64,000 bases of DNA, from the sequence record PQ464595.1; one strand, written 5' to 3'. A program made the position numbers and the translations under genes. Positions 10,169-53,894 of this stretch are shown here, piece after piece. The notes beneath the pieces are model-generated. The model ran no database searches. It was not told where the DNA came from and was given only the letters and a program-made list of their open reading frames with translations. Position 1 is the stretch's first letter. Each line of letters starts with the position of its first letter.

Positions 10169-10229
10169 TAGAATCTATTTTCTGTTTTTTCGATAAAAGT
10201 GAATAGAGTGTGGTTGCTGTTAGATTCTA
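10169..10229 (-). ncRNA. CAGCAA module E1 (free hairpin)
   Basis: TAGAATCTA-ACAGCAA-(variable)-AAACAGAAAA-TAGATTCTA. Confidence 0.75.
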
Positions 10230-10235
10230 AAATTG

Positions 10236-10562
10236 TTATTTGGTCTTAAGTTCTGCTACTACAGCAGCAACTAAGTCCGGTGTAAAATCAATGCCGAAAA
10301 CTTCGGAATAATGTTTTACTGTACCTTCATAACCATGACGCTTGTCATTCAAGCGGTAACGCAATTCAAGAATCGCATTGTCAAAGTTAAACCAAGGATT
10401 GTTTTGACTCGCATGTAAGCGACCCCAATCAGTCAATGGTACGAAACCTTCATCAGCAGACTTACCCCGAAGAATATTATAGATAATATGCTCGTGTACA
10501 GTGTGCTCTTTCTCAAGTTTCCAGGTTGTTGTTACAGTAATGAATTGTTCTTTGGTCAACAT
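10236..10562 (-). CDS. hypothetical protein
   Basis: 108-aa ORF with SD. Confidence 0.7.
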   Translation of the reverse strand: MLTKEQFITVTTTWKLEKEHTVHEHIIYNILRGKSADEGFVPLTDWGRLHASQNNPWFNFDNAILELRYRLNDKRHGYEGTVKHYSEVFGIDFTPDLVAAVVAELKTK

Positions 10563-10682
10563 AGTATGTTCCTTTTGGATAGTAATTAATTTAGTGTTTT
10601 GTTCTGAATTAACTTTATCCGGTGGACCAGTACTGAATTTCTATAGCATCATAGGATTTACCTTTTTGTTTGTTTACTTAAT

Positions 10683-10758
10683 TAGAGCGAGTAATCGGAT
10701 TCGAACCGATGTGACCGACTTGGAAGGACAGCATATTAAGCCTCTATATGATACTCGC
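10683..10758 (-). tRNA. tRNA-Gly(TCC)
   Basis: Cloverleaf, loop CTTCCAA, U73; 3' CTA. Confidence 0.9.
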
Positions 10759-10761
10759 AGG

Positions 10762-10895
10762 TTGTACTGCCGCTCTCAGTACTGTACATACTTGTTCTTT
10801 ACGAACTGACCTGTACAGGTGCTACGCGGTTCCCGTCATATAATTTTACAAGCTGGGGGAATCATACAAGCTTGTTTCACACAGGAAGTGAATGA
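10762..10895 (-). ncRNA. candidate pseudoknotted RNA between tRNA-Gln and tRNA-Gly
   Basis: Hairpins TTCAC/GTGAA, ACAAGCT/AGCTTGT (loop TTCCC can pair with downstream GGGAA), TGTAC/GTACA, GTACTG/CAGTAC. Confidence 0.5.
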
Positions 10896-10906
10896 AATCT
10901 TTAAAT

Positions 10907-10982
10907 TAGCAGGCCCACAAGGACTCGAACCCTGAACGCGAGAATCAAAATCTCGTGTGTTAACCAATTACACCATGAGCCT
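10907..10982 (-). tRNA. tRNA-Gln(TTG)
   Basis: Cloverleaf, loop TTTTGAT, G73; 3' CTA. Confidence 0.92.
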
Positions 10983-10986
10983 AATC

Positions 10987-11030
10987 AAGAATCTATATAT
11001 TATTAACCGTGTTAATGCAGAAAGATTCTT
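10987..11030 (-). ncRNA. CAGCAA module E2 (minimal variant, CTGCAT)
   Basis: AAGAATCT-TTCTGCA-TTAAC ACG GTTAA-TAATATAT-AGATTCTT. Confidence 0.55.
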
Positions 11031-11079
11031 TGTTCTGTTCAGAATTTTTATTCATATCAAACCTGCCTGAACATCACTT

Positions 11080-11155
11080 TGCGGTCGTGCTTGGACTCGA
11101 ACCAAGATAAAAGAGTTAACAGCTCTCCGTAATTAAACCTTTATACGACACAACC
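11080..11155 (-). tRNA. tRNA-Asn(GTT)
   Basis: Cloverleaf, loop CTGTTAA, G73. Confidence 0.92.
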
Positions 11156-11174
11156 TTTTGTTTTTCTTACTTAT

Positions 11175-11203
11175 ATTATACCACATTATTTTGTGGCGTT
11201 TCA
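11175..11203 (-). promoter_or_regulatory. TGAAACG-class promoter
   Basis: TGAAACG-N16-TATAAT. Confidence 0.75.
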
Positions 11204-11212
11204 TCTTTTTTC

Positions 11213-11713
11213 TTAATTTTCTAAATTAAGTTCTTCATGAATTTCTCGATGACAGTTAGCACAGACTAACATACATTTATCTAATTCACTTTGAATCAGT
11301 TCCCATGAACGAGTAATACCTTCATCTGAAATACCAAAATCTTTTTGATTTGGGTCTTTATGATGGAAGTCTAACGCAGCTATTGATTTGTCATAACCAC
11401 ATCGTTCACATTTACCGCCAAGATATTCAACGGCTTTTATCTTTAATCGTTTACGATGTTCTGTAACTCCTTCAGAATTACATTTCATACATACACGCTT
11501 ACCGTCGGTTCTTTGTGAAAATTCAACATTGTGTTTTAAACATATTGAAGACTCACGTTGAATCATTATATGAGTTTTTAAACTCAAATCTTTGAAATAC
11601 TTCTTCATTGTAGTTGCTGATACATTACAAGTATTAGCAATCTGTTGAATAGTACTTCCACGTGAAATCATTTCCTGAACTACACGATTATCAATTTCAA
11701 GTTTTCTGCTCAT
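11213..11713 (-). CDS. HNH endonuclease (probable free-standing homing endonuclease) with N-terminal HTH
   Basis: CERCGY...LDFHH..P...C..VCANCHREIH motif. Confidence 0.9.
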   Translation of the reverse strand: MSRKLEIDNRVVQEMISRGSTIQQIANTCNVSATTMKKYFKDLSLKTHIMIQRESSICLKHNVEFSQRTDGKRVCMKCNSEGVTEHRKRLKIKAVEYLGGKCERCGYDKSIAALDFHHKDPNQKDFGISDEGITRSWELIQSELDKCMLVCANCHREIHEELNLEN

Positions 11714-11730
11714 AATTCACTTAAAAATAC

Positions 11731-11792
11731 TGGAATCCATTTTGATTTTTCAATTAACAGTTGATTTCATTTATGGTTGCTGCTGGATTCCA
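11731..11792 (-). ncRNA. CAGCAA module E3 (free hairpin)
   Basis: TGGAATCC-AGCAGCAACC...AAAAATCAAAAT-GGATTCCA. Confidence 0.75.
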
Positions 11793-11816
11793 AATCCGGT
11801 TTTGTTCAATTAAAGC

Positions 11817-11871
11817 TAGAATCTATTTTTGTTTTCTATATCCGAGAAGTTTTAATTGCTGGTAGATTCTA
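11817..11871 (-). ncRNA. CAGCAA module E4 (free hairpin)
   Basis: TAGAATCTA-CCAGCAA...AAAACAAAAA-TAGATTCTA. Confidence 0.75.
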
Positions 11872-11879
11872 AATGAGTA

Positions 11880-11987
11880 CAAATTGAGTTTACAGAAGTC
11901 CTTCCAAGGGACTAATACGTATTCTATTCTGACCTTAATAGGATAACATGCTATCCGTGTCACACCATAGTACGCCTGGTGAATTTG
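11880..11987 (-). ncRNA. candidate multi-way-junction RNA
   Basis: Closing CAAATT/AATTTG with hairpins CACCA/TGGTG, GGATA/TATCC, CTATT/AATAG, AGTCC/GGACT. Confidence 0.5.
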
Positions 11988-11995
11988 ATTAATAC

Positions 11996-12110
11996 TGGAA
12001 TTTATTTCGTTTTAGGCGGCTGCTCTCCCAACTGAGCTACAGTACTAGTACTGACAGGACTCGAACCTGCGACATGCTGCGTGATAGAAGTTAGTTGCTG
12101 TTAAATTCCA
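11996..12110 (-). ncRNA. CAGCAA module E5 carrying a circularly permuted tRNA domain
   Basis: Order: stem, ACAGCAA, anticodon 3' half, T arm (GCAGG TTCGAGT CCTGT), closed acceptor CAGTACT-AGTACTG, D arm (GCTC AGTTGGGA GAGC), stem. Confidence 0.8.
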
Positions 12111-12392
12111 AATTTTGTTTTAAAGATACGGATTATAGTTCGGATCACTAAAAATATTGTACTCTTTATGTTTACCATCCACAATAGTGTAGAAAGTAAA
12201 GTTCACAGAGTTATATGATTTACGGTCATTTTCTAAGTATATTGAAGTACTAGAACCGCCGATATTCACACGACTCACAACATAATAATGATCAGAATCT
12301 AACGCTAATGCGTTTATTCTATCACTTTCGTAACCAGCTTTAAGCTCAGTTACTTTAGCATATAAAATATCCATATCTTTCCTAATTAATAC

Positions 12393-12529
12393 AAGAATTC
12401 ATCGTTTATTGGATAGCCGTGTCTACCTATTTCACCATCACTATTCAGTACTGACATAGTTCGTAGGACTCGAACCTACACGCCATAAGGCCGCTATTTG
12501 GGTTAACATTTAGTTGCTGTTGAATTCTT
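12393..12529 (-). ncRNA. CAGCAA module E6 carrying a circularly permuted class-II (Leu-like) tRNA domain
   Basis: Variable arm, T arm GTAGG TTCGAGT CCTAC, acceptor closed by a TCAGTACTGA hairpin, D arm GTG AAATAGGTAGA CAC, GCTAT/ATAGC stem. Confidence 0.78.
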
Positions 12530-12541
12530 TAATTTACTACT

Positions 12542-12617
12542 TAGTGGGAATAGCTGGACTCGAACCAGCGGCGACTCGATTATCGGTCGAGCATTCTACC
12601 AACTGAATTATATTCCC
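12542..12617 (-). tRNA. tRNA-Ile(GAT)
   Basis: Cloverleaf; loop CCGATAA (C33 instead of U33); 3' CTA. Confidence 0.88.
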
Positions 12618-12870
12618 ATTTAATGCCTGTTACCAGGCATAATCACCAGTGCCGATGTAACATGCTTTGTTACAATGACCACTCATTGCGTCAAGTACAT
12701 CGTTCAGTTCTTCAAAGCGAGGATCTTTTTCATCCATTTCAAAGAACACATAAGTCAGTGCTTGGTACAAATCAATGTTATTTGGACGTTCGTTTGCGTC
12801 AACAAACTTACGAACCGCTTCGTGCATATTAGCACTATTCAGAATTTCATCTACGATGGTTTCCATAATA

Positions 12871-13329
12871 TCACCTAAAAGGATATGGTACAATGTTATG
12901 ATGTTCCCTAAGAAATTCTATGCTATGATTAACTTTCATCATATCTTCAAAGTACTTAACGAACTCGCGTAACCGTGTTACAAATTCGTAACTGAACGGA
13001 ACTTCTTTTAACGTACTTAACTGGAAGTGCCATTCCTCACTTATACTGTAAGGAAAACCATTGACTTTTAATATATCTTTATCGTCTTTATCCCAATAAT
13101 GTACGTTGAACCTGTTTGATAACAAGTCAACTACTATTGAAAGGGTGTTATCCTTTTCGTCCGACAAATAAAAATGAATTATCCCATCTCGTGAAGAATA
13201 ATGATCATTGTCATTAAAAACCACAGTATTAGATAATCCATCAATATTCGATCTACATCGTTCCGGTACATGTAATAACGAAAGGAAATATTCTTCTCCA
13301 ATTTCGTACAACACATTGTATTTGCTCAT
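12871..13329 (-). CDS. hypothetical protein, EEWxFQxST paralog family
   Basis: ISEEWHFQLSTL motif. Confidence 0.7.
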   Translation of the reverse strand: MSKYNVLYEIGEEYFLSLLHVPERCRSNIDGLSNTVVFNDNDHYSSRDGIIHFYLSDEKDNTLSIVVDLLSNRFNVHYWDKDDKDILKVNGFPYSISEEWHFQLSTLKEVPFSYEFVTRLREFVKYFEDMMKVNHSIEFLREHHNIVPYPFR

Positions 13330-13560
13330 TTAGAATGAATCCGGTTTTGCTACGCTCCGTACTGCCGACATGAAACCTTTTTGGAGGTCAGTCTTGGCAA
13401 TCGCCAGCCAACGTTTATCAATATCAGGATGATCTTCAAGTGCTTCGATCATATCTCCGACTTTAGCAGCTAAGTCCTTAATTGCGTTCATTGCATTAAT
13501 TTCTTGCTGATTAAGATCTCGATACCCTTTAATTTGTTTGTGTTGATTATCCATAATCAT
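13330..13560 (-). CDS. acb2: anti-CBASS cyclic-oligonucleotide sponge Acb2
   Basis: MDNQHKQIKGYRDL...RWLAIAKTDLQKGFM.AVR.VAKPDSF closely follows the Acb2 sequence as recalled. Confidence 0.92.
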   Translation of the reverse strand: MIMDNQHKQIKGYRDLNQQEINAMNAIKDLAAKVGDMIEALEDHPDIDKRWLAIAKTDLQKGFMSAVRSVAKPDSF

Positions 13561-13578
13561 TATCTCTCAATTAAATGC

Positions 13579-13636
13579 TGGAATCCACAAGGTCAAAGTA
13601 AAAGTTTGATTTTTGTGTGGTTGCTGGAGGATTCCA
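13579..13636 (-). ncRNA. CAGCAA module E7 (free hairpin)
   Basis: TGGAATCC-TCCAGCAACCACAC...GGATTCCA. Confidence 0.75.
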
Positions 13637-13878
13637 AATTCTTTATTCTACGTAGCCAATAAAGCCAACGTGTTCTTTAACAGTACTTTTCTTCTTAGTT
13701 TCTTCGTCATGAACTTCACGTTCAAAAACTACTGGTTCCAAAAGAACAACTGCTTTTTGTGCTCCGAAGATATTGCTAACTTGCTCGTCATTCAATTCTT
13801 CAGCACTAGTATGACGACGCAAAGCACCATCTACTTTGTAGTAGTAATCGTAAAACATTTTTTTCTTCCTTGTGTGAT

Positions 13879-13975
13879 TGGCGGTAAAGAGAGGATTTGA
13901 ACCTCCGAGGCTAGGGATTACCTAACCTGGCCGCTTTCCAGGCGACTGCATTAAGCCAAGCTCTGCCACTTTACC
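13879..13975 (-). tRNA. tRNA-Ser(GGA)
   Basis: Class II cloverleaf, loop CTGGAAA, G73, CCA. Confidence 0.95.
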
Positions 13976-14152
13976 TTTTAATATATTCCAAGTATTTATC
14001 ATTTAATACTTTATGTCTATAGCCACCCTTCTTTCTCAAGGACTTGATATAAAAGGTAGCTTTAGGATCTAATCCTTTGCTAATAAGATAATCTTTTTCA
14101 AATTCATCTTGTAGTTTAGACATGTATGACTCACTTGAGTAAATTAAAAAGC

Positions 14153-14212
14153 TAGAATCTATAATCTTTGTTTTCACCAATTGAATAAGAGTATGTTTGC
14201 TGTTAGATTCTA
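14153..14212 (-). ncRNA. CAGCAA module E8 (free hairpin)
   Basis: TAGAATCTA-ACAGCAA-ACATAC...AAAACAAAGATTA-TAGATTCTA. Confidence 0.75.
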
Positions 14213-14336
14213 TGCGAGAAAGGTTGGACTCGAACCAACGACCAGGCCATTAAAAGTGGATGAAGTATGGTTGCTGAGAAATTACATTACAGTAATTTTT
14301 GGGTTCTACCTGCTCTACCAACTGAGCTACTTTCTC
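14213..14336 (-). tRNA. tRNA-Lys(TTT) interrupted by a 49-nt CAGCAA insert (14260-14308) in the anticodon stem
   Basis: Deleting the insert gives the perfect arm GGCCA-CTTTTAA-TGGCC; acceptor, D and T arms are intact. Confidence 0.75.
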
Positions 14337-14344
14337 ATAAATTT

Positions 14345-14448
14345 TGGGGCAAGGAATGGAGTTGAACCATTTCCAGGATCAGTGGCATCTCCAGTGTTTT
14401 ATCACTCAGAAGACAATGCCCATTGGGTAATTAAGTTCCTCAAGCCTC
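14345..14448 (-). ncRNA. tRNA-like RNA: T arm plus acceptor-like stem and a long hairpin in place of the anticodon arm
   Basis: AATGG TTCAACT CCATT; GGCA/TGCC, TCTTC/GGAGA, AGTG ATAAAA CACT. Confidence 0.5.
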
Positions 14449-14524
14449 TACTAAGTTATAGTTCCCTATAGATGAATATAACGTTCGCTTTCTGCGGCCT
14501 CTAATGTGCCTATCCTTAATTACT

Positions 14525-14617
14525 TGGAGGAAGATGTGGGATTCGAACCCACGGAGGGCTATTAACCCCCGCCTGATTTCAAGTCAGGTACAATAAGCCA
14601 AACTCTGCCAATCTTCC
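14525..14617 (-). tRNA. tRNA-Ser(TGA)
   Basis: Class II cloverleaf, loop CTTGAAA, CCA; discriminator U. Confidence 0.93.
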
Positions 14618-14647
14618 AAAAAAGTACTTCACAGTACTTTGTACGCT

Positions 14648-14802
14648 GGATTCTCATTAATTGAGCAACTATCTAGCACGGCTCAATATAACTAATTACT
14701 ATCTCCCTAGTTACCAGGTGGACACGAAGGGAGTTTTACGTCCGAGTATCCAATCTCATTTATGATTGATTTTTAAGATTTTATGTGTTGCTGTCAGAAT
14801 CC
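14648..14802 (-). ncRNA. CAGCAA module E10 with a ~135-nt structured payload
   Basis: GGATTCT-GACAGCAA...AGAATCC; inner CTCCCT/AGGGAG, GGAC/GTCC (pseudoknot), ATTGAGC/GCTCAAT. Confidence 0.65.
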
Positions 14803-14831
14803 GAGTGCTAATTCGGTTTTAATTAAAAGAC

Positions 14832-14937
14832 AAGAATCGTTGTTTTCTGTCCCCACAACCAGTGGTAAATCGGAATTGAACCGAAGGTGTTTTTCGCCAA
14901 ATGAAATATAAAGAGTTATGTTTGCTGGACGATTCTT
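14832..14937 (-). ncRNA. CAGCAA module E11 with T arm and closed acceptor-like hairpin
   Basis: AAGAATCGT-CCAGCAA...TCGG TTCAATT CCGA...CCAC/GTGG...AAAACA-ACGATTCTT. Confidence 0.7.
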
Positions 14938-14938
14938 T

Positions 14939-15012
14939 TAGCGTTCCCAACGGGGTTCGAACCCGTGTTGCCTGAGTGAAAGTCAGGTATCCTACCGCTA
15001 GATGATGGGAAC
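14939..15012 (-). tRNA. tRNA-Glu(TTC)
   Basis: Cloverleaf, loop CTTTCAC, G73; 3' CTA. Confidence 0.95.
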
Positions 15013-15195
15013 AATTTTTATTCAGATTCTTTCAATGACCATTCTGTACTTTTATCGGTACTTTTGGTTACTTCAAAACCTAATTCGGACATTACTTCAG
15101 GAAGGTTATTGTTATCAATACCACTAAGGATATGACGAACGATTACCATGTTTTCTTCAGATGATGCCATTTTACTATCCTTTGTTGAAGGAACT

Positions 15196-15311
15196 GAAAT
15201 CTTTGTTTTTCTGGCCCCAAGCACAGCCTACATAGCAACGTGGCTGCTGCGGATTCGAACCGCACCGTTTTTTTCGCATAAAAAATATTGTTTTGTTTGC
15301 TGTAAGATTTC
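15196..15311 (-). ncRNA. CAGCAA module E12 with T arm, closed acceptor and mini D arm
   Basis: GAAATCTT-ACAGCAA...TGCGG TTCGAAT CCGCA-GCAGCC/GGCTGT-GC TTGGG GC-AAAAACA-AAGATTTC. Confidence 0.72.
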
Positions 15312-15328
15312 GTGTTGCTAATACTTTT

Positions 15329-15357
15329 ATTATACCACAAATATTTGATTCGTTTCA
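15329..15357 (-). promoter_or_regulatory. TGAAACG-class promoter
   Basis: TGAAACG-N16-TATAAT, directly upstream of E12. Confidence 0.75.
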
Positions 15358-15378
15358 AATATTTCTTAATTAAATTCA

Positions 15379-15500
15379 GGAATCTCGTTTTATCCAGCAC
15401 CAAGCTCCCACTATTTGAATAAGGCAGATGTTCGTGGGTGGGGAATTGAACCCCGTCGTTTTGTTTTCATCAAAAGGTTTAATTTTTGCTGTAAGATTCC
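15379..15500 (-). ncRNA. CAGCAA module E13 with T arm, closed acceptor and mini D arm
   Basis: GGAATCT-TACAGCAA...GGGG TTCAATT CCCC-CCCAC/GTGGG-AGC TTGGT GCT-AAAACG-AGATTCC. Confidence 0.72.
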
Positions 15501-15517
15501 GCTGCCTTATGTACTAC

Positions 15518-15546
15518 ATTATACCAGATTTTTTTGAGTCGTTTCA
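15518..15546 (-). promoter_or_regulatory. TGAAACG-class promoter
   Basis: TGAAACG-N16-TATAAT, directly upstream of E13. Confidence 0.75.
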
Positions 15547-15572
15547 AATTTTTCTGTATAATTTTCAGAAAC

Positions 15573-22285: not shown

Positions 22286-22404
22286 TGCGGTGAGTACAGG
22301 AATCGAACCTGTGACTTCGGCGTGAAAGGCAATTGTTTGATTGCTGTTAGATTCAGTACTGGAATCCATTTTTTTACGCTATTTTACCACTAAACTAACT
22401 CACC
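22286..22404 (-). tRNA. tRNA-Glu(TTC) interrupted by a 46-nt CAGCAA insert (22331-22376) at 29/30
   Basis: Deleting the insert gives GCGGC-CTTTCAC-GCCGA; acceptor GGTGAGT/ACTCACC, G73. Confidence 0.75.
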
Positions 22405-23627: not shown

Positions 23628-23707
23628 TAGTGCGAGGGGATGGACTTGAACCACCGACACGGAGTTACCCTAAGATAATCTTGCTCTACCATCTGAGCTA
23701 CCCTCGC
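23628..23707 (-). tRNA. tRNA-like gene with aberrant anticodon arm (anticodon not assignable)
   Basis: Perfect acceptor GCGAGGG/CCCTCGC, D and T arms; anticodon/variable region about 5 nt too long with irregular pairing (AGATTATCTTAGGGTAACTCCG). Confidence 0.6.
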
Positions 23708-24244: not shown

Positions 24245-24359
24245 TGTGGAGAGGGGTGGATTCGAACCACCGTACCGTTCTTATGAATGAAATTTATGGA
24301 TGCCGTAAGATTCCATCTGGAATCGCTTTTCGTGTCCTGGGCCGCTAGACGACCTCTCC
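24245..24359 (-). tRNA. tRNA-CAT-like gene interrupted by a 39-nt CAGCAA-family insert (24292-24330; core CGGCAT)
   Basis: Deleting the insert gives CGTTC-ATTCATAA-GAACG (8-nt loop); the insert has a GATTCC AGAT GGAATC stem. Confidence 0.6.
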
Positions 24360-30881: not shown

Positions 30882-30956
30882 TGTGGCTCATACCAGATTC
30901 GAACTGGTGTGGACAGAGATTTAGAGTCTCCCGCTACGCCTCTCAGCTAATGAGCC
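30882..30956 (-). tRNA. amber suppressor tRNA (anticodon CTA)
   Basis: Cloverleaf GGCTCAT/ATGAGCC, arm GGAGA-CTCTAAA-TCTCT, A73. Confidence 0.9.
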
Positions 30957-42051: not shown

Positions 42052-42873
42052 TCATAAGGACAACATAGCCTCAACGATTGATGGAATATCACATTCGTAG
42101 AATCCAGCACAATTGATATTATTAACTTCCAGTACTTTATACCCTTCAGACGTTTCAGCAAAATCCATTACAAAGGCATCTGCTGGAACCCATTTTTTAC
42201 ATAGTTCTTCAGCTTTATCAACTATATACTTAGGTGCAGTTTGTGCAAGACGAACTTCACCATGTAATTTATAAAGTGACCAAGCTACGACTTCACCTTT
42301 TACAATAAAGAGACGATATTCAGAAATAATATCTTTACATGAAGAAACCATTATTTCAAAATCATCAGATACAGTTTCTTTAAATTGGTTAATAGCATAT
42401 TCAAAATTATCACGTTCAATAACAGTAGCTATCATCTTTTTAGTATCATGTACTGGACGAATAAAGACTTTATCAGTCCAGATAGGATTTAACCTTTCTG
42501 TAATATTGGATACAGTACCGAAAGATGCATCCCCATTAAGAAAATTAGGTCTTCCCCAATATGTAGTCATTTGTTCAAATATGTTGAAGTTTTCATTTAT
42601 AAATCCACCAGGAGTATAACCTTCTTCAACAAGTTGATTAGCTAATGCATAACTTCCAAATGACATAGTGGGTACTGATTTATCAAAGTACTTTTCATAT
42701 GAAGCATCAGTATAATCAGTAACATCTTCAGGAACAAATATATTCAAAAATGGAACTGGTTTAACTGAAGTGTGAGATATGTTATTCTGTACCATATATT
42801 CTTTCATGATACGAAAACCATCTTCATTGAAATACTTATCCATTATTAGAAAGTGCATGTATATCCTTAGCAA
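42052..42873 (-). CDS. ATP-grasp domain protein (DUF4343/R2K-like)
   Basis: VFIRP..D.K, EYR.F, FVMD, VLEVN.IN.AGFY. Confidence 0.85.
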   Translation of the reverse strand: MLRIYMHFLIMDKYFNEDGFRIMKEYMVQNNISHTSVKPVPFLNIFVPEDVTDYTDASYEKYFDKSVPTMSFGSYALANQLVEEGYTPGGFINENFNIFEQMTTYWGRPNFLNGDASFGTVSNITERLNPIWTDKVFIRPVHDTKKMIATVIERDNFEYAINQFKETVSDDFEIMVSSCKDIISEYRLFIVKGEVVAWSLYKLHGEVRLAQTAPKYIVDKAEELCKKWVPADAFVMDFAETSEGYKVLEVNNINCAGFYECDIPSIVEAMLSL

Positions 42874-43172: not shown

Positions 43173-43294
43173 TAGTCGGGAATTGTGGACTCGAACCACA
43201 TCTCACGGCTCCCTATGCAATTGTATTGGTTGCTGTGAAATTCCATTACAAGAATTTATGTTATACGGTGTGCTAACCCTTACACTAATTCCCG
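43173..43294 (-). tRNA. tRNA-Pro(AGG)-like gene interrupted by a 47-nt CAGCAA insert (43219-43265) at 29/30
   Basis: Deleting the insert gives CCGGC-ATAGGGA-GCCGT; C1-G72, A73 and G37 fit Pro identity. Confidence 0.7.
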
Positions 43295-47084: not shown

Positions 47085-48278
47085 TTACTTACCGTCGAAC
47101 ATGGTTTCAATCACGTCCGGTGACTCAGCTTTGCTGAACTTCACGTGTAGACGGTGTTCACCGAATTCACGGTTGATAACAATACTAGTACTGTTAACAA
47201 TGGTGTCAGACTTGCTGAACTCCAGGTTCACGAAGTACTGAATCTCTTTGATTGGTGTTTCAACTTCTTCACCATCAACATCGACTTCAGTTCCTTCTTC
47301 TTCGTCATCCCAATCCATGTCGTATACACGAGCATCAATTGCCTTCATCTCTTTCTCAAGAGTACCTTCATCTGCGAAGATGTAAGCACGAAGGGTATCG
47401 TACTTCGCCATGAATGAGAAGCTGGTCATACGATTCATTGCTTTATCGTCGAACTTCACTTCTTTACCATCAATGGTGAACTCAGATACTACGAAGGAGT
47501 TACCTTCACGAGCTTCTACTTCAACGTTCAGTTCACGGAAGGTTTCAGTGAAAGTCTGAGTTGGGTAGCGGTTCAGTTCTTCGATCAGACACTGGATCAT
47601 ATCGAAGCTGATAGTTTCTGCCACTTCCCACAGTGTTTCGAACTGAGGAATGTAGCTCTTGTTAACCAGCTTGTCGTTCAGCAGTTCAATCATAACCTGC
47701 TTAGCCAGTTTCTTGTACTCGAAGTGGTAGAAGATACGGCTTGGACGGTTACGAAGGAACTCGGAAACGTTGCGGTTGTTCGAGGTCAGGATGTACAACT
47801 TGTTGTAAGAACCAGTACCATCAAGCAGGGTCAGGATCGCTTCCTGATGCTCACGTTCTGCGTAAACCTTCTCGAATTCATCAAACAGAATCAGAGCTTT
47901 GTCTTCAATAGCTTTGATGAAGTTAATGAAACCACCATCAGTATAACAGTTCTGAATGATAATGGTTGGAATACCCATTTCAGCCAGAGCAAGACTTACA
48001 TCTTTAGCAAGCTGAGTTTTACCAGCACCTTTAGTACCGCTCAGAAGCACACCAGTATTCTTACCTTCACGTTCCAGGTAAGTGTTGATCACTTTGTTGT
48101 TACGTGAAGCCATTTCACCGTAAACTTTCGCAGGGCGAGTAAACGGAGTGGACTTCAGTAGGTAGTACTGCCCATTTTGTGGATTATATTCCACGGTATA
48201 AGTACCCGCAGGAATAGTTTCAATTTTGTTACCGAATTCACGAGCAATCGTGATAATATCACCGCTTTGATTGTACAT
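47085..48278 (-). CDS. AAA+ ATPase
   Basis: Walker A GTKGAGKT, Walker B LILFDEFEK, sensor TSN, RPSR. Confidence 0.9.
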   Translation of the reverse strand: MYNQSGDIITIAREFGNKIETIPAGTYTVEYNPQNGQYYLLKSTPFTRPAKVYGEMASRNNKVINTYLEREGKNTGVLLSGTKGAGKTQLAKDVSLALAEMGIPTIIIQNCYTDGGFINFIKAIEDKALILFDEFEKVYAEREHQEAILTLLDGTGSYNKLYILTSNNRNVSEFLRNRPSRIFYHFEYKKLAKQVMIELLNDKLVNKSYIPQFETLWEVAETISFDMIQCLIEELNRYPTQTFTETFRELNVEVEAREGNSFVVSEFTIDGKEVKFDDKAMNRMTSFSFMAKYDTLRAYIFADEGTLEKEMKAIDARVYDMDWDDEEEGTEVDVDGEEVETPIKEIQYFVNLEFSKSDTIVNSTSIVINREFGEHRLHVKFSKAESPDVIETMFDGK

Positions 48279-49631: not shown

Positions 49632-50450
49632 TTAACCTTCATAGTAGGCTTGAACAGTACTAAACAACTTCATGGTATCCATGTGGTAAAGTCCAGAACA
49701 GTTCCAGCAATTATATTCAACAATCTTAATGCCATTTGGAGTTTCAGCCAAATCCATAGTATAGAACTGAGCAGGAATATACAGTTTAGCGTATTCATGT
49801 GAAGCAGCTAATACTTGTTCGGGAATTTCAGAACTATAGATAGTACTGTTATTCCGGCGATACTGCGAACCGCTAATAGGTTCACCATTCTGACAGATGA
49901 AACGATATTCAGCGTCAATCTGAACAACATCGTTTATCAGTACTGTTTCTTCCTGATAATTCTCACGATGGAAGTTCGATTCGATGAAGTATTTCAGTAC
50001 TTCACCAGCTTCCATAACTCCAGCAGTAAATGCTTTCAGGTCGGAGCTTGGTTTTACAAATTTATCAACCCCAAAGGATGCGAACAAATCACGGTCATCT
50101 TTGAGATTCAAAAACTCAGGTGTTCCGTTCAACAATGGTAATCCTAAAGTTGAATAAAACGCCTGATCGAAATTACGAATGTCATAAGACAAGCCTTGAC
50201 GCATTTTGGCAATCAGTTCAGGTGGCAGATTATCAGAAGTACCTGACTCCAGGATTTCTACCATCTTAGTACCGCCACGCATGATGAATGTATCATTCAC
50301 ATCCAAATCATCTAAGCCAGTAATAGTCTTAGTGAAAGGAATAACACCGAATGGTACAATCTCATAGCCTAACTTCTGGAGAGGAATGAATTCATCTTCA
50401 AGAGCTTGGTACATACGAGCAGTATCTTGTACTAACCATTTAATAGCCAT
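49632..50450 (-). CDS. ATP-grasp domain protein (DUF4343/R2K-like), paralog of 42052-42873
   Basis: FVKPSSDLK.F, EYRF, YTMD, IVEYN..NCSGLY. Confidence 0.85.
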   Translation of the reverse strand: MAIKWLVQDTARMYQALEDEFIPLQKLGYEIVPFGVIPFTKTITGLDDLDVNDTFIMRGGTKMVEILESGTSDNLPPELIAKMRQGLSYDIRNFDQAFYSTLGLPLLNGTPEFLNLKDDRDLFASFGVDKFVKPSSDLKAFTAGVMEAGEVLKYFIESNFHRENYQEETVLINDVVQIDAEYRFICQNGEPISGSQYRRNNSTIYSSEIPEQVLAASHEYAKLYIPAQFYTMDLAETPNGIKIVEYNCWNCSGLYHMDTMKLFSTVQAYYEG

Positions 50451-50791
50451 AAATGCCTCAATTAGCCGTTACAGAAGAAAACACCAATAGAATTTTCTTT
50501 ATAATCTTCTGGAAGATGCTTTTTAATTACTGCGATGTAATCAATGATTTCTTCATCTGGATCACCCTCAGTTGGGTCTTCCAAAAACAGAGTTCCAGAC
50601 AAATGGAATACAGCAGTGAAATCACCATCCATATAATCATACATGTTTTCCATTTCCATACAGTGATGTGATAGATCTTGTAACTGATCTTCTGATAAGC
50701 CAAGGTCATCAGCATCAATTTTAAATGGAGCAGGTTGTTTCCAAGGTGTTACATTAGCAATTGTCATTTTGATTTTCTCACATGTTAAATG

Positions 50792-50880
50792 TGCGGAAGG
50801 TGTGGGATTCGAACCCACAAGCCGATTCTCACCGACCGAAGGATTAGCAATCCTCTCCAATACCGTTATGGGAACCTTCC
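50792..50880 (-). tRNA. tRNA-Ser(GCT)
   Basis: Class II cloverleaf, loop TTGCTAA, G73. Confidence 0.95.
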
Positions 50881-50889
50881 AATACTTAC

Positions 50890-50918
50890 ATTATAGCACA
50901 ACTTTTTTTATCGTTTCA
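50890..50918 (-). promoter_or_regulatory. TGAAACG-class promoter
   Basis: TGAAACG-N16-TATAAT. Confidence 0.75.
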
Positions 50919-51626
50919 TCTTTTTTCAAGATTTTTAACAATTCGTTGTGCAAGTTATAGAGAACAAACACATTCTCACGAGTGAGACGGTATTTCTCCA
51001 GGTGTTCGTCAGTAATATCATCCATAGATGGAAATAGTACTAAACAGTCTTCATCACTTAGGCGAGTATTATCGAAGAATTGAACAAACCCTTCTGGATC
51101 ATTGTCAGTGAAGATAACATTGGTAAGCTCATAACCATGAAGGTCAAAGAACTGAACATGATAGTTATACTGATTGATAGACACAGATGCTACCAAATCT
51201 TCACCTAACCGCATAGTACTGTTAAAGCACATATATGGTTCATGAACAACAGATGGATATTCATAAAATTCGTCAAATGTACGCTTAGCGTCATTAGCAT
51301 CGAATGCTACCAGTTGATTGTACTTGTTCATTGTAGACTCCGATAATGACTTAAGATTGCGTTAACATCATCTTTGGTAATACCAAAGACTTCATCTTTA
51401 TCACCTTCAAGGAAGACATGATAATCAATGGATGCGATGGTTTCACGATTAAAAGGAATACCATGATGTGGATTAACTAAGTTCATATTGAACTGTACTT
51501 TATCCAGCTTCATGTATGTAGGGGTCACTTTTACTTCATAATCTGTAGTACTAATGACCAGTACGTTATTAATACCGTCATAGCGTTCATAACGGTCAGT
51601 GCCTAATAGGGATTCAAAGGTTGAAC

Positions 51627-52010
51627 TTAACATGGTTTCTCTCCTGTACATAAGTTTTTGAAAACATCTTTAACGAATTCAATATCAGAGTACCGCAAAG
51701 AGCCAAAATCATGAATAGTACTTAATTGAAAGAACCATTCTTCAGTGATATTGGTATCAAGCATCTTCCTAGCTACTGTATCATCTCTGAGCCAGAAACG
51801 CAAGCCAGATTCAGACATTTTTAACGAAAAATCAGCCCCGCTCAATGAGGCGTAAGATAATATTGGCATTAAAATGCCGTTATTAATATTGAGAATCTTA
51901 TTTTCACCATCGAGGGTTATTTCAGATGAAAATAGTCCAACATCAGGTTTAACTATAATATCAGAGTGCGTCGAAACGCACTCATTGTTTTCAAGGTATT
52001 TAGATAGCAT
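51627..52010 (-). CDS. hypothetical protein, EEWxFQxST paralog family
   Basis: ITEEWFFQLSTIH motif. Confidence 0.7.
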   Translation of the reverse strand: MLSKYLENNECVSTHSDIIVKPDVGLFSSEITLDGENKILNINNGILMPILSYASLSGADFSLKMSESGLRFWLRDDTVARKMLDTNITEEWFFQLSTIHDFGSLRYSDIEFVKDVFKNLCTGEKPC

Positions 52011-52543
52011 TACAGTACTTCGTATTCTGTCCAGTTGCGTTGTTCTTTCGCAGCAGCTTTTTGTTCTGGAGTACGGGTATCTTCAAGACGACTTACAGCA
52101 TCTTTCAGTACTTCCACGTCTACCATAGTTTCCATATAATGCATATGGTCAGTATAGCCGAACATGTACTTAATTCCAGTCCAAACACGCTTATACCACG
52201 CCTGGCGAATCTCCATACAAAGATTGATATTACACATTCCTAAATGCTTATCATCGTGTTCATCACCAGTATTGTACTGACCAATATGAATGGAATGTTC
52301 ACGAACATCTCCGCAATGACAACGGACGATGATTACTTTGCTTTCAGAACTCATAAAGTTCTCCTTAGTTATTTTACCGACATTATCGGTTTGTACTGCT
52401 GTTAACTCAGCTTAGTGTACAAACCGTATATCGGGATAGAACTAATAATCATTATTGACCTCCATCACAATTACATAAATGCCTTGGGCCTAAACAATAA
52501 GGACACCAACCATACGGTGCTTCTTCATTGATTTTATAGATAA

Positions 52544-53196
52544 TCATAGCAGAGGCATCAAAATGTCACCAATCAAATCTGGAAGATTGGTATAATCACT
52601 GAAACGATATTTATCGTTCAATGTAATACGCTGAAGATTATGTTCATCAAGAACAATATCAACTACCAGGTTTTGGTGATCAACATTCATTTGGCACATG
52701 GCTGAACGAATGGCTGACATAAACAATTCCTGACCAACTTCAAAGTAATGAAATTCGTCAGTACTGCCATGTTCCTGTACAATCTTGTCAGCGATTTTAA
52801 GAATAGCACCATCATTGAAAGCGATTGGACAGTTCGGATTATACTTGACATGAATCATTAGAATAATTCCATCAGCATTTTAGTACTGTAGTCTGGATAG
52901 TCAAAGCGACCTTCAAGACCATAGTCTAGGTTATAAGTTTCTTCCACCAGCACAGTTGTTTTTCCTTCCTCACCATTAATAATAGAAGGAACTACAAACA
53001 CGATACGGGAAGCATCAATTTGGTTCTGTTTCAACGCATAGCGAAATGCGGTCATCATGAATTCGCTACCAACAGTAATGTCAAAACGTTCAGTTTTAAC
53101 CATTTTGTCAGCATATGCCATTGATGATTTATCAGGAAGAACCATGCCCATAGTATCATCGTAACGAACTATGAAGTCAAATTGTTCGAGATTCAT
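52544..53196 (-). CDS. two tandem paralogous small proteins (52858-53196, 52544-52858)
   Basis: Shared VG(Q/S)E(L/F).M.A.R motif and similar C-termini. Confidence 0.65.
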
Positions 53197-53894
53197 AATA
53201 ACCTCTTAACAGTACTGCGGTGGAGGTGGTAAATCACCAAGGCGATCCGCCCAATAATGATATACAAAAATGAATGTACCCTCAGAGTTTACTTTGTAAA
53301 CACTATGGTAATTCGGATGCCCGATACGGACATAACCTGATTTATGATCACGTTTAGCAAACATATCTGCCATAACACGTGTCGGGAACAGGTTATAGAA
53401 GCGGCGACGTTTGTCAGCTTCATGTTTATTCTGGAACAGTTTGTTAAACAGAAGACCAGTTTTGTATTGGGCTTCAGTAATCTGTTCAGCACGATTGCGG
53501 CGGCAATCCATGTTGAATACCCAGCTATTGTTCTCTTCAAATAAAGAGATAGCTTCATCCAGTAGATCTTCGTCGGACATTGAGTATTCTTCTAATGCGA
53601 AGTACTCCCAAAAATCCCAACCATGACCGGATGCATCAGTTTCATTAACACGAAAGAATTTCATTTTTAATCCTTCAGGAATCCGATGATTCCACATACT
53701 AATTGAACAGCGACGAGTACTCCACCGATTACATTACCGTAAAATCCACCAATAGTATACATCAATGGCATTTGAAGCAATGGCATGAACATACCAACTA
53801 AACTGAACCCGTTAGAACTAACACGGTCACGAAGCTGTTCATTGATGAATTTCCAATATAACCCATACATAGGATACTCCCTCTCGATTAATAT

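What the first reader, a model, noticed from the sequence alone, without database searches (positions are those of the whole stretch)
11996..12529. Circularly permuted tRNA domains with acceptor stems sealed by AGTACT hairpins (E5, E6)
Seen: T arm, then closed acceptor, then D arm, hung from the CAGCAA stem. E5 retains a CT-ATC-AC loop remnant; E6 is class-II/Leu-like. Known: this order is the topology of bacterial YrlA Y RNAs, which mimic the tRNA elbow and bind Ro60/Rsr. The terminal stem here lacks the Ro60-binding GNCGA motif. Inference: non-aminoacylatable tRNA mimics that tether elbow-recognising proteins or act as decoys, possibly with a non-Ro partner.
Basis: partly seen in the sequence, partly recalled or inferred. 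Interest (0 to 1): 0.8.

Follow-up and report, generated by a model that had tools for sequence, protein, structure and literature searches.

The report
Phage Y-RNA-like tRNA mimics
Two unannotated small RNA genes in a giant Erwinia phage fold as back-to-front tRNAs on a conserved stem, and they look like the RNA partners of a divergent Ro60-type protein that this phage and hundreds of others encode, which points to a widespread unrecognised branch of the Ro/Y-RNA system.

Summary
On the minus strand, E5 (12110-11996) and E6 (12529-12393) each fold as a 9-bp terminal stem, an internal loop with an invariant CAGCAA, and a permuted tRNA body (T arm, closed acceptor, D arm). Orthologues in 8-9 related jumbo phages keep 94-99% of pairs, with 11-12 compensatory pairs. 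E5 hits Rfam YrlA at 41.9 bits, below the threshold of 69 but equal to genuine Ro60-adjacent phage Y RNAs.

They are 2 of 11 clustered paralogues sharing the stem/CAGCAA/A-rich module. Three or four ordinary-order tRNA-like genes carry the same module in place of the anticodon loop.

The window is Erwinia phage Kaldavass. It has no Pfam-TROVE gene. It does encode a 504-aa DUF2828+DUF7788 protein whose model matches only Ro60 structures over its full length. It lies about 204 kb from the RNAs, next to an RNA ligase.

In unrelated phages the same CAGCAA module lies directly beside DUF2828 genes (63 on the gene strand, 5 on the opposite strand; p about 1e-13).

Best reading: these are Y-RNA-like partners of a divergent Ro60, a new variant of a known kind. 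AGTACT is a genome-wide signature, not specific to these RNAs.

The parts
11996..12110 (-). E5: a complete Y-RNA-like element (P1 stem, CAGCAA loop, permuted class-I tRNA-like body, A-rich strand, P1')
   Evidence: Sequence; Rfam YrlA 41.9 bits; covariation in 9 orthologues
12095..12100 (-). E5 invariant CAGCAA in the 5' strand of the internal loop
   Evidence: Invariant in all 9 orthologues and in all paralogues
12016..12080 (-). E5 tRNA-like domain: anticodon-like stem, variable loop, T arm, closed acceptor (two abutting AGTACT), D arm
   Evidence: The anticodon-like stem covaries: GCCGC/GCAGC, GCCAC/GUAGC, GUCGC/GCAAC, and GCAGC/GCUGC in CBB
12393..12529 (-). E6: a complete Y-RNA-like element with a class-II (Leu-like) permuted tRNA body; starts 14 nt after tRNA-Ile
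   Evidence: Sequence; covariation in 8 orthologues
12514..12519 (-). E6 invariant CAGCAA
10169..10229 (-). Paralogue, module only (UAGAAUCUA-A-CAGCAAC...A-rich-UAGAUUCUA)
11731..11792 (-). Paralogue, module only (UGGAAUCCA arms)
11817..11871 (-). Paralogue, module only
13579..13636 (-). Paralogue, module only
14153..14212 (-). Paralogue, module only
14648..14802 (-). Paralogue with a 140-nt insert that is not tRNA-like
14832..14937 (-). Paralogue with a T arm and a reduced tRNA-like body
15196..15321 (-). Paralogue with a T arm. It has its own promoter, and its 5' leader (UAGCAAC) pairs with the loop of the closed acceptor (GUUGCUA)
15379..15510 (-). Paralogue with a T arm. It has its own promoter, and its 5' leader (AUAAGGCAG) pairs with the acceptor loop (CUGCCUUAU); this pairing covaries in Yen9-04
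15329..15358 (-). Sigma-70 promoter TTGAAA-18-TGgTATAAT for the 15311 element
   Evidence: 11 of 12 matches plus TG
15518..15547 (-). Sigma-70 promoter for the 15500 element
14214..14336 (-). Normal-order tRNA-like gene with the module (closed P1 hairpin plus CAGCAAC) in place of the anticodon loop
22287..22404 (-). Normal-order tRNA-like gene carrying the module (GGAUUC-CAGUACU-GAAUCU-AA-CAGCAAU)
43175..43294 (-). Normal-order tRNA-like gene carrying the module. It aligns through the module with a permuted element from another contig (L022)
24247..24359 (-). Normal-order tRNA-like gene with a variant module (CGGCAU)

Best explanation
E5 and E6 are two members of a family of phage-encoded Y-RNA-like noncoding RNAs. 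Each is transcribed from the minus strand within the tRNA cluster. E6 lies 14 nt after tRNA-Ile and E5 follows an 81-codon ORF, so both are probably cut out of a polycistronic transcript. The paired 5' and 3' ends (P1, 9 bp), together with the adjoining internal loop (invariant CAGCAA on the 5' strand, an A-rich run on the 3' strand), form the docking site for the phage's Ro60-fold protein. That protein is Kaldavass CDS0476 (DUF2828 + DUF7788/vWA), at record 278662-280176, outside the window. The permuted tRNA body keeps the D-loop/T-loop elbow, has a sealed acceptor and has no anticodon loop. It therefore presents a tRNA shape that can neither be charged nor decode. By analogy with YrlA-type Y RNAs, it would bring tRNA-recognising enzymes or substrates to the Ro-like ring, or gate access to it. 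Genes for an RNA ligase, a CCA-adding enzyme and a Thg1-like enzyme suggest RNA (tRNA) repair or quality control during infection. What is shown: the fold and its covariation, the paralogue family, the Ro60 fold of the protein, and the cross-lineage linkage of the CAGCAA module to DUF2828 genes. What is inferred: physical binding, which surface is bound, and the biological role.
For: Fold and covariation. YrlA similarity: 41.9 bits. Bona fide Ro60/TROVE-adjacent Y-like RNAs of Rhizobium phage RHph_Y65 score only 34-37 bits, and LeBron's scores 39.8. Family: 11 clustered paralogues, all on the transcribed strand, confined to 5.4 kb, with none elsewhere in the 341 kb of genome scanned; two have strong promoters of their own. 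Protein: Pfam DUF2828+DUF7788 with a weak vWA match; DxSxS invariant; AF2 pLDDT 86.8; the top six Foldseek PDB hits are all Ro60, full length, E 2e-9 to 6e-7, and the next hits are vWA-only. Linkage: the same stem/CAGCAA/A-rich module lies directly beside DUF2828 genes in mycobacteriophage LeBron (3 copies, one a tRNA-like YrlA hit), Felix O1-like BPS17L1 (4 copies, one tRNA-like), Listeria LMTA-148 (3), Campylobacter CP81 (2), Bacillus FADO, Sinorhizobium phiM19, and two contigs recovered from metagenome assemblies. Systematic test on 80 IMG/VR loci: 63 modules on the gene strand against 5 on the opposite strand within 600 nt outside the ORF, 40 of 80 loci against 5 of 80, p=7.7e-14. Specificity control: the TROVE-type phage RHph_Y65 has GUUGCGA(A) units instead of CAGCAA. 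Context: RNA ligase 650 nt from CDS0476 and a CCA-adding enzyme 4 kb away; RtcB or T4 Rnl1-type ligases lie near DUF2828 genes elsewhere.
Against: In Kaldavass and its close relatives the RNAs are about 204 kb from the protein gene, and no module is adjacent to it. For this clade the link therefore rests on co-occurrence and on other lineages. No binding, expression or end-mapping data exist. The defining YrlA motif GNCGAA is absent. DUF2828 genes usually sit beside tRNA clusters, so part of the association could reflect a shared tRNA-cluster neighbourhood, although the strand bias, the median distance of 83 nt and the low density in far flanks argue against this. I detected the module with a regular expression that demands a closing stem, not with an independently trained covariance model.
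Confidence: 0.7

Rival explanations
1. Stand-alone tRNA decoys. The sealed, anticodon-less tRNA bodies soak up host tRNA-targeting defence nucleases or other tRNA-binding proteins, independently of the Ro-like protein. In this reading P1 and CAGCAA serve only stability or processing.
For: The tRNA elbow is preserved and covaries. Several tRNA identities are represented: a class-I body in E5, a Leu-like class-II body in E6, and reduced bodies in three paralogues. The phage invests heavily in tRNAs and tRNA enzymes.
Against: Five paralogues have no tRNA body yet keep P1, CAGCAA and the A-rich strand, so the module is the conserved core. The module tracks DUF2828 genes across unrelated phages. 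The anticodon loop, the usual target of anticodon nucleases, is missing.
Confidence: 0.12
2. Circularly permuted tRNA genes, as in Cyanidioschyzon merolae. These would be matured by circularisation and re-cutting into working tRNAs.
For: The 3' half precedes the 5' half, and the terminal stem could bring the ends together. The phage has an RNA ligase and a CCA-adding enzyme. The same module occurs in normal-order tRNA-like genes like an intron.
Against: There is no 7-nt anticodon loop to restore, and the CUAUCAC remnant is not conserved. Only 0-4 nt link the acceptor strands, with no discriminator or CCA. No bulge-helix-bulge can be drawn, because CAGCAA has no complement on the other strand. 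Module-only paralogues cannot be tRNAs.
Confidence: 0.03
3. Cis-acting processing or regulatory signals of the tRNA/ORF polycistron (RNase sites, attenuators, 5'-UTR elements of the downstream small ORFs), not trans-acting RNAs.
For: Most copies lie just upstream of small ORFs or just after tRNAs. In other phages the module is often about 25 nt upstream of the DUF2828 start codon, which would suit autoregulation.
Against: Two copies have dedicated strong promoters and are not followed directly by an ORF. tRNA-like inserts are unnecessary for a cleavage site. The downstream genes are unrelated to one another.
Confidence: 0.1
4. DNA-level repeats (miniature inverted-repeat elements, recombination or homing sites), or false positives from tandem-tRNA junctions.
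For: The elements have terminal inverted repeats, an HNH endonuclease gene lies nearby, and Rfam YrlA can be fooled by dimeric tRNAs.
Against: All copies are on the transcribed strand. The arms covary while their sequence differs. G-U pairs occur. Internal helices covary. There is no upstream 5' tRNA half or downstream 3' half. The same module occurs in AT-rich and GC-rich phages.
Confidence: 0.03

Closest known systems
YrlA-type bacterial Y RNAs (Rfam RF02553; Salmonella Typhimurium, Mycobacterium smegmatis; Chen et al. 2014, PMC4201824)
   Same: The 5' and 3' ends are paired in a stem next to an internal loop. The second module is a tRNA mimic in the order T arm, closed acceptor, D arm (plus a variable arm). 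Several paralogues occur per genome, some without a full tRNA body (compare YrlB). A Ro60-fold protein and an RNA ligase are encoded in the same genome.
   Different: CAGCAA(C/U) replaces the GNCGAAN0-1G motif. The Rfam score is below the gathering threshold and covers only the tRNA-like part. The protein partner belongs to Pfam DUF2828/DUF7788, not TROVE. In this phage the RNAs are 204 kb from the protein gene, and there are 11-15 copies rather than 1-4.
Phage Ro60 with Y-RNA-like RNAs (Thermus phage phiLo phiRo60-Yrl1/Yrl2, PMC12135203; Rhizobium phage RHph_Y65 array seen here)
   Same: Both are phage-encoded Ro60-fold proteins with several stem/internal-loop RNAs. RHph_Y65 has about 8 tandem units, most with a T arm, inside a tRNA cluster.
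   Different: Those proteins are canonical TROVE, and their RNAs carry CGAA/GUUGCGA motifs and lie directly upstream of the gene.
Circularly permuted tRNA genes (Cyanidioschyzon merolae and others)
   Same: The 3' half is encoded before the 5' half, and both circular permutations of one RNA exist.
   Different: There is no anticodon loop, no spacer with discriminator/CCA and no bulge-helix-bulge, so the product is not a tRNA.
DUF2828 'Ro-like RNA binding protein' of actinobacteriophages (SEA-PHAGES annotation; PHROG 850 'RNA-binding protein')
   Same: It is the same protein family as Kaldavass CDS0476 (32% identity to LeBron gp53).
   Different: I found only genome announcements naming the protein. 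No description of its RNA partner or of the CAGCAA motif turned up in the searchable literature or in Rfam 15.

Membership tests
YrlA / bacterial Y RNA (RF02553) | tRNA-like domain in the order T arm, closed acceptor stem-loop, D arm, with elbow nucleotides | tested here: met
   The Rfam alignment covers model positions 24-84. All helices are supported by covariation. The GG of the D loop and the UUCGA of the T loop are invariant.
YrlA / bacterial Y RNA (RF02553) | 5' and 3' ends paired in a stem flanking an internal loop | tested here: met
   P1 has 9 bp, 99-100% paired, with 4 pairs changed on both sides in each alignment.
YrlA / bacterial Y RNA (RF02553) | GNCGAAN0-1G motif on the 5' strand of the Ro-binding stem (PMC4201824) | tested here: not met
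   No such motif in E5, E6 or any paralogue. An invariant CAGCAA stands in that place.
YrlA / bacterial Y RNA (RF02553) | Score at or above the Rfam gathering threshold (69 bits) | tested here: not met
   E5 scores 41.9 bits and E6 has no hit at E<=10. Note that Ro60-adjacent phage examples also score only 34-44 bits.
YrlA / bacterial Y RNA (RF02553) | Encoded next to a Ro60 (TROVE) gene | tested here: not met
   No TROVE or vWA ORF in the window. No canonical TROVE by tblastn. The Ro60-fold DUF2828 gene is 204 kb away. The same RNA module is adjacent to DUF2828 genes in other phages.
YrlA / bacterial Y RNA (RF02553) | Bound by Ro60 in vivo; carries tRNA-type modifications (pseudouridine 55, D) | not testable with these tools
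   Needs RIP or EMSA and modification mapping.
Ro60 protein family (for the proposed partner CDS0476) | Ring of HEAT-like helical repeats followed by a vWA domain with a MIDAS DxSxS motif | tested here: met
   AF2 pLDDT 86.8, pTM 0.85. The top six Foldseek hits are 1yvr, 9kop, 9nf8, 2nvo and 9l5y (two chains), TM 0.43-0.58 over the full length. D303, S305 and S307 are invariant.
Ro60 protein family (for the proposed partner CDS0476) | Match to Pfam TROVE (PF05731) | tested here: not met
   Pfam gives DUF2828 + DUF7788 only. BLASTP against a phage TROVE protein finds nothing. A profile search against PDB sequences gives E about 0.1 to phiLo Ro60, at the start of the vWA domain.
Circularly permuted tRNA genes | Processing can restore a 7-nt anticodon loop and a free acceptor end with discriminator/CCA | tested here: not met
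   The anticodon loop is replaced by P1 and CAGCAA. The acceptor strands are joined by 0-4 nt.

The most novel reading that the evidence does not exclude
DUF2828/DUF7788 proteins (at least 7,700 in public data and 712 phage genomes) are a second, sequence-unrecognisable branch of Ro60. In this reading the stem/CAGCAA/A-rich RNA is their cognate Y RNA. tRNA bodies can be plugged into this module in either circular permutation, either as a normal tRNA with the module in place of the anticodon loop or as a permuted tRNA hanging from it. The permuted forms place their RNA ends exactly where an anticodon nuclease would cut. They may therefore mimic nicked tRNA and organise a phage tRNA-repair or anti-defence particle together with the neighbouring RNA ligases.
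Probability: 0.35. Interest if true: 0.8.

Novelty: new variant of a known kind. Interest (0 to 1): 0.62.

Why it matters
Ro60/Y-RNA particles are conserved from bacteria to humans, but their function in bacteria and phages is poorly understood. The bacterial and phage Y RNAs described so far are the ones found by looking next to TROVE genes. This locus leads to a different sequence family of Ro60-fold proteins that is common in tRNA-rich phages, including Felix O1-like, KVP40-like, Listeria, Staphylococcus, Campylobacter and mycobacterial phages. It also gives a simple RNA signature for their partners (closing stem, CAGCAA, A-rich strand). That signature provides a searchable definition and laboratory-tractable models such as Felix O1-type phages and mycobacteriophage LeBron. 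The jumbo phage is an extreme case, with 11-15 such RNAs carrying different tRNA-like heads. It also suggests that several 'hypothetical proteins' and 'intron-containing tRNAs' in these genome annotations may really be RNA genes of this family.

Tried and rejected
- Known ribozymes, riboswitches and sRNA families: Rfam 15 at E<=1 over the window, and at E<=0.1 or 0.05 over 13 related loci, gives only tRNA and sub-threshold YrlA hits.
- Canonical Ro60: tblastn with a phage TROVE protein found 95 phage records, none listed from this clade (only part of the list was shown). A local tblastn found no hit in the 291 kb of Kaldavass tested. I first took this as 'no Ro', which the annotation and the fold search then overturned.
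- RtcB: absent from the 291 kb of Kaldavass tested. The ligase beside CDS0476 has the Pfam RNA_ligase (PF09414) domain, not RtcB.
- Bulge-helix-bulge or intron reading of the tRNA-embedded modules: no complementary strand for CAGCAA exists, and ARAGORN's intron and anticodon calls are inconsistent with one another.
- Hfq (AAC-AGC-AAC as ARN triplets) and CsrA (GGA in the P2 loop of module-only copies) sponge ideas: the motifs fit loosely. The invariance of the 'N' positions and the linkage to DUF2828 genes make them secondary, and I did not test them further.
- Homology of the E5 stem with the RHph_Y65 units: the similarity is limited to tRNA-derived parts, and the conserved motifs differ.
- Covariance model of the module trained only on DUF2828-adjacent copies: not built. 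MAFFT left the 3' arms ragged, and a hand-made alignment could not be submitted.
- Hits in L136 and L137 proved to be coding sequence (Ser-Pro-Ala-Ile gives CCAGCAAT). The statistics were therefore recomputed with true ORF ends.
- Genome coverage: Kaldavass record 50001-53699 and 344641-366556 (7%) were not scanned.
Full report
**Identity of the window.** The window is 100% identical to Erwinia phage Kaldavass (PQ464595.1, 366,556 bp), record 62001-126000. This is a RaK2/GAP32/CBB-like jumbo phage. The region is a tRNA cluster transcribed from the minus strand, with 26-30 tRNA genes interleaved with small ORFs. Neither E5 nor E6 is annotated in Kaldavass or in any relative.

**The observation.**
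- Both start and end with a perfectly complementary 9-nt arm: UGGAAUUUA/UAAAUUCCA in E5 and AAGAAUUCA/UGAAUUCUU in E6.
- After the 5' arm comes A-CAGCAAC, then a spacer, then the 3' strand of a 5-bp anticodon-like stem and a variable loop (a class-II variable arm in E6).
- Next come a canonical T arm (GGUUCGAGUCC), an acceptor stem closed on itself, U8-A9 in E5, a D arm with the GG of the elbow, and the 5' strand of the anticodon-like stem.
- The element ends with an A-rich strand and the 3' arm.
- Rfam's YrlA model matches E5 at 41.9 bits (E=1.2e-7) over model positions 24-84, the tRNA-like module. E6 is not matched, presumably because of its class-II arm and longer acceptor.

**Is the fold real?** I collected orthologues from XbC2, three IMG/VR contigs of 355-371 kb, Yen9-03/04, GAP32, BF, CBB and one 45-kb contig.
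- For E5 (9 sequences) the permuted cloverleaf has 94.3% of cells paired, against 21-44% when partners are slid. Twelve pairs change on both sides, and 0 of 500 shuffles reach the observed values.
- For E6 (8 sequences) the figures are 98.7% against 31-37%, with 11 such pairs.
- The anticodon-like stem of E5 is instructive. It reads GCCGC/GCAGC, GCCAC/GUAGC and GUCGC/GCAAC, keeping a central C-A mismatch that becomes A-U in CBB.
- The acceptor of E5 is a 7-bp CAGUACU/AGUACUG helix closed by UUCG (GAP32), AUCG (BF) or UAAU (Yen9-04).
- AGTACT is not special to these RNAs. It occurs 208 times in the window against 19 expected, and CAGTACTG occurs 43 times against 0.85 expected. It is 7-13-fold enriched throughout Kaldavass and its relatives, but not in unrelated phages.
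- The CUAUCAC 'loop remnant' of E5 is not conserved.

**E5 and E6 belong to a larger family.** A structural scan (CAGCAA preceded within 3 nt by an arm of at least 7 nt whose reverse complement follows within 200 nt) finds 11 clean members in the window. All are on the minus strand within 10169-15500.
- In the 341 kb of Kaldavass scanned (93%) there are no others, and the background is about 0.05 per kb.
- Five members are module-only (55-62 nt): P1, A-CAGCAA(C/U), a short P2 hairpin, an A-rich strand and P1'.
- One member has a 140-nt insert that is not tRNA-like.
- Five members (E5, E6, 14937, 15311, 15500) carry a T arm and a more or less complete permuted tRNA body.
- The 15311 and 15500 elements have strong promoters of their own (TTGAAA-18-TGgTATAAT). 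Their 5' leaders pair with the loop of the closed acceptor. This pairing covaries between copies and in Yen9-04.
- Three or four ordinary-order tRNA-like genes (14214-14336, 22287-22404, 43175-43294, and 24247-24359 as a variant) carry the same module as a closed hairpin in place of the anticodon loop. Annotators called these 'tRNA-OTHER' or intron-containing tRNAs.
- A permuted element from another contig (L022), when rotated, aligns with the normal-order gene at 43175 through the module and its flanks. The same RNA therefore exists in both circular permutations. What matters appears to be the folded object, not where the chain ends lie.

**Looking for the partner.** The defining features of YrlA are the tRNA-like domain, the GNCGAAN0-1G motif and adjacency to a Ro60/TROVE gene (PMC4201824).
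- The window has no TROVE or vWA ORF.
- A BLAST hit of E5 led to Rhizobium phage RHph_Y65. There, an array of about eight Y-like units lies between a tRNA and a TROVE gene. Each unit starts with GUUGCGA(A) and most have a T arm. Rfam YrlA scores these units at only 34-37 bits. E5's sub-threshold score is thus typical of real phage Y RNAs.
- tblastn with that TROVE protein detects 95 phage records down to 22% identity. None of the listed records or most frequent host genera belongs to this clade, although only part of the list was shown, and a local search of Kaldavass is negative.
- The Kaldavass annotation lists a 504-aa 'RNA-binding protein', CDS0476, at record 278662-280176.
- This protein belongs to PHROG 850 and is Pfam DUF2828 + DUF7788 with a weak vWA match. 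It has no BLASTP similarity to the TROVE protein.
- With a 27-sequence alignment its AlphaFold model has pLDDT 86.8 and pTM 0.85.
- Foldseek against the PDB returns Ro60 structures as the six best hits: Xenopus 1yvr, phiLo 9kop and 9l5y (two chains), human 9nf8 and Deinococcus 2nvo. E-values run from 2e-9 to 6e-7 and TM-scores from 0.43 to 0.58 over the full length. All further hits are isolated vWA domains with E>1e-3.
- The MIDAS DxSxS motif is invariant.
- An RNA ligase lies 650 nt away and a CCA-adding enzyme 4 kb away. The genome also has a Thg1-like enzyme, a TyrRS and a second small ligase-like gene.

**Linking RNA and protein.** The family of CDS0476 is found in 712 phage records.
- In mycobacteriophage LeBron, the 360-nt gap after gp53 (annotated 'Ro-like RNA binding protein') contains three RNAs with a GC-rich P1, then CAGCAAU, then an A-rich strand. 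The middle one has a T arm, a 7-bp closed acceptor and a D arm, and is a YrlA hit at 39.8 bits.
- In Felix O1-like BPS17L1, four modules (P1 AGACCNN/NNGGUCU; one with a tRNA-like body) follow the gene inside the tRNA cluster.
- Listeria phage LMTA-148 has a promoter and three tandem modules just upstream of the gene, with RtcB downstream.
- Campylobacter CP81 has two modules just upstream. Bacillus FADO and Sinorhizobium phiM19 also have them.
- Two contigs recovered from metagenome assemblies, one assigned to a Fischerella genome bin, have a module 13-80 nt upstream of the gene.
- Systematic test: in 80 IMG/VR loci with a homologue, and counting only sequence within 600 nt outside the true ORF, there are 63 modules on the gene strand (44 upstream, 19 downstream) against 5 on the opposite strand. 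That is 40 of 80 loci against 5 of 80 (binomial p=7.7e-14). The median distance is 83 nt, and 43 of the 63 are at least 70 nt long.
- P1 differs in sequence from lineage to lineage, while CAGCAA and the A-rich strand stay the same.
- Rfam has no family for the module. Only sub-threshold YrlA hits fall inside the tRNA-bearing copies.
- In the jumbo-phage clade itself no module is adjacent to the gene. There the RNAs have multiplied in the tRNA cluster.

**Mechanism.** The best-supported reading is that E5 and E6 are Y-RNA-like partners of the Ro60-fold DUF2828 protein.
- P1 plus the CAGCAA/A-rich loop would be the protein-binding module, in the place where TROVE-type Y RNAs have GNCGAA.
- The sealed, anticodon-less tRNA body would be the effector module. 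Established Ro60 biology, as summarised in PMC4201824 and PMC12135203, is that Y RNAs gate the Ro ring and tether it to partners such as PNPase, and that YrlA is handled by tRNA enzymes.
- The recurrent neighbourhood of RNA ligases (PF09414-type here, RtcB in Listeria phage, Rnl1 in a metagenomic contig) and tRNA clusters points to RNA or tRNA repair or surveillance during infection.
- One observation is worth testing. The chain ends of E5 and E6 lie exactly where an anticodon nuclease would nick a tRNA, so they resemble a nicked tRNA held together by a helix.
- All of this paragraph beyond fold, family and linkage is inference.

**Rivals.** Four alternatives are weighed in the Rival explanations section, each with evidence for and against:
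- free-standing tRNA decoys;
- true permuted tRNA genes;
- cis-acting processing or regulatory signals;
- DNA repeats or tandem-tRNA artefacts.

**Novelty.** Ro60/Y RNA, YrlA tRNA mimicry and phage Ro60 are all known. 'Ro-like RNA binding protein' is an existing annotation for DUF2828 proteins in actinophages.
- I found no paper or Rfam family describing the CAGCAA module, its link to DUF2828 proteins, the multi-copy arrays in jumbo phages, or the tRNA-embedded and permuted pairs (Rfam calls above). The literature search covers only the held open-access library.
- I therefore rate it a new variant of a known kind.

Noticed in passing
whole window, e.g. 12041-12052, 12447-12452, 22355-22360; also loci L116-L119, L210, L002, L003, L027, L048, L111: The palindrome AGTACT is 7-13-fold over-represented genome-wide (208 against 19 expected in the window; CAGTACTG 43 against 0.85). 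This holds in Kaldavass and all its relatives but not in unrelated phages. AGCGCT is completely absent from the 341 kb scanned. This is a clade-wide sequence signature of unknown cause (modification target, protein-binding site?).
   Followed up: partly
window 11872-11985, minus strand: A three-hairpin element of about 105 nt lies between E5 and the next module. It is conserved in XbC2, Yen9-04 and GAP32 (92% identity), with compensatory changes in the third hairpin (AGUCC/GGACU, AGUCU/AGACU, AGUUCC/GGAACU). It is annotated as a 46-aa ORF (CDS0176) that overlaps the neighbouring RNA. It is probably another unannotated structured RNA, and it has no Rfam match.
   Followed up: partly
window 15379-15510 and 15196-15321, minus strand: The two promoter-driven paralogues start with a leader (AUAAGGCAG / UAGCAAC) that is complementary to the loop of their closed acceptor hairpin (CUGCCUUAU / GUUGCUA). 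The pairing covaries between copies and in Yen9-04 (CAA/UUG), which suggests a pseudoknot or an alternative acceptor helix.
   Followed up: partly
window 14214-14336, 22287-22404, 43175-43294, 24247-24359, minus strand: These 'intron-containing' or 'tRNA-OTHER' genes are ordinary-order tRNA bodies whose anticodon loop is replaced by the CAGCAA module closed as a hairpin. They could be processed and given a CCA end like tRNAs, yet they cannot decode.
   Followed up: partly
window 42052-42873 and 49632-50450, minus strand: Two paralogous R2K-clade ATP-grasp proteins (Pfam R2K_2/R2K_3, E about 1e-17). Each lies immediately downstream of a tRNA-type gene, and the first follows the module-bearing tRNA at 43175. 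An AAA ATPase (47085-48278) and a 423-aa protein with no Pfam match lie between them.
   Followed up: no
L114 91-1290 (Rhizobium phage RHph_Y65, MN988525.1 138390-139589): An array of about eight tandem Y-like RNA units lies between tRNA-Leu and a TROVE gene. Each unit begins GUUGCGA(A) and most have a T arm. None is annotated, and only two are seen by Rfam YrlA, both below threshold.
   Followed up: partly
L127 1305-1454 (Campylobacter phage CP81) and window 11823-11963: Small annotated ORFs (CP81 ORF140; Kaldavass CDS0176) coincide with conserved RNA elements and are probably mis-annotations.
   Followed up: no
window 23630-23707 and 30883-30956, minus strand: The cluster includes a tRNA with a four-base anticodon (UUAG by ARAGORN) and an amber-suppressor tRNA (CUA).
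   Followed up: no
Kaldavass record 297191-297940, 315533-316801, 273209-274324, 324291-324737 (outside the window): The phage carries a large tRNA toolkit: a Thg1-like tRNA-His guanylyltransferase, a tyrosyl-tRNA synthetase, a CCA-adding enzyme and a second small 'RNA ligase' gene, besides the ligase next to the Ro-like gene.
   Followed up: no
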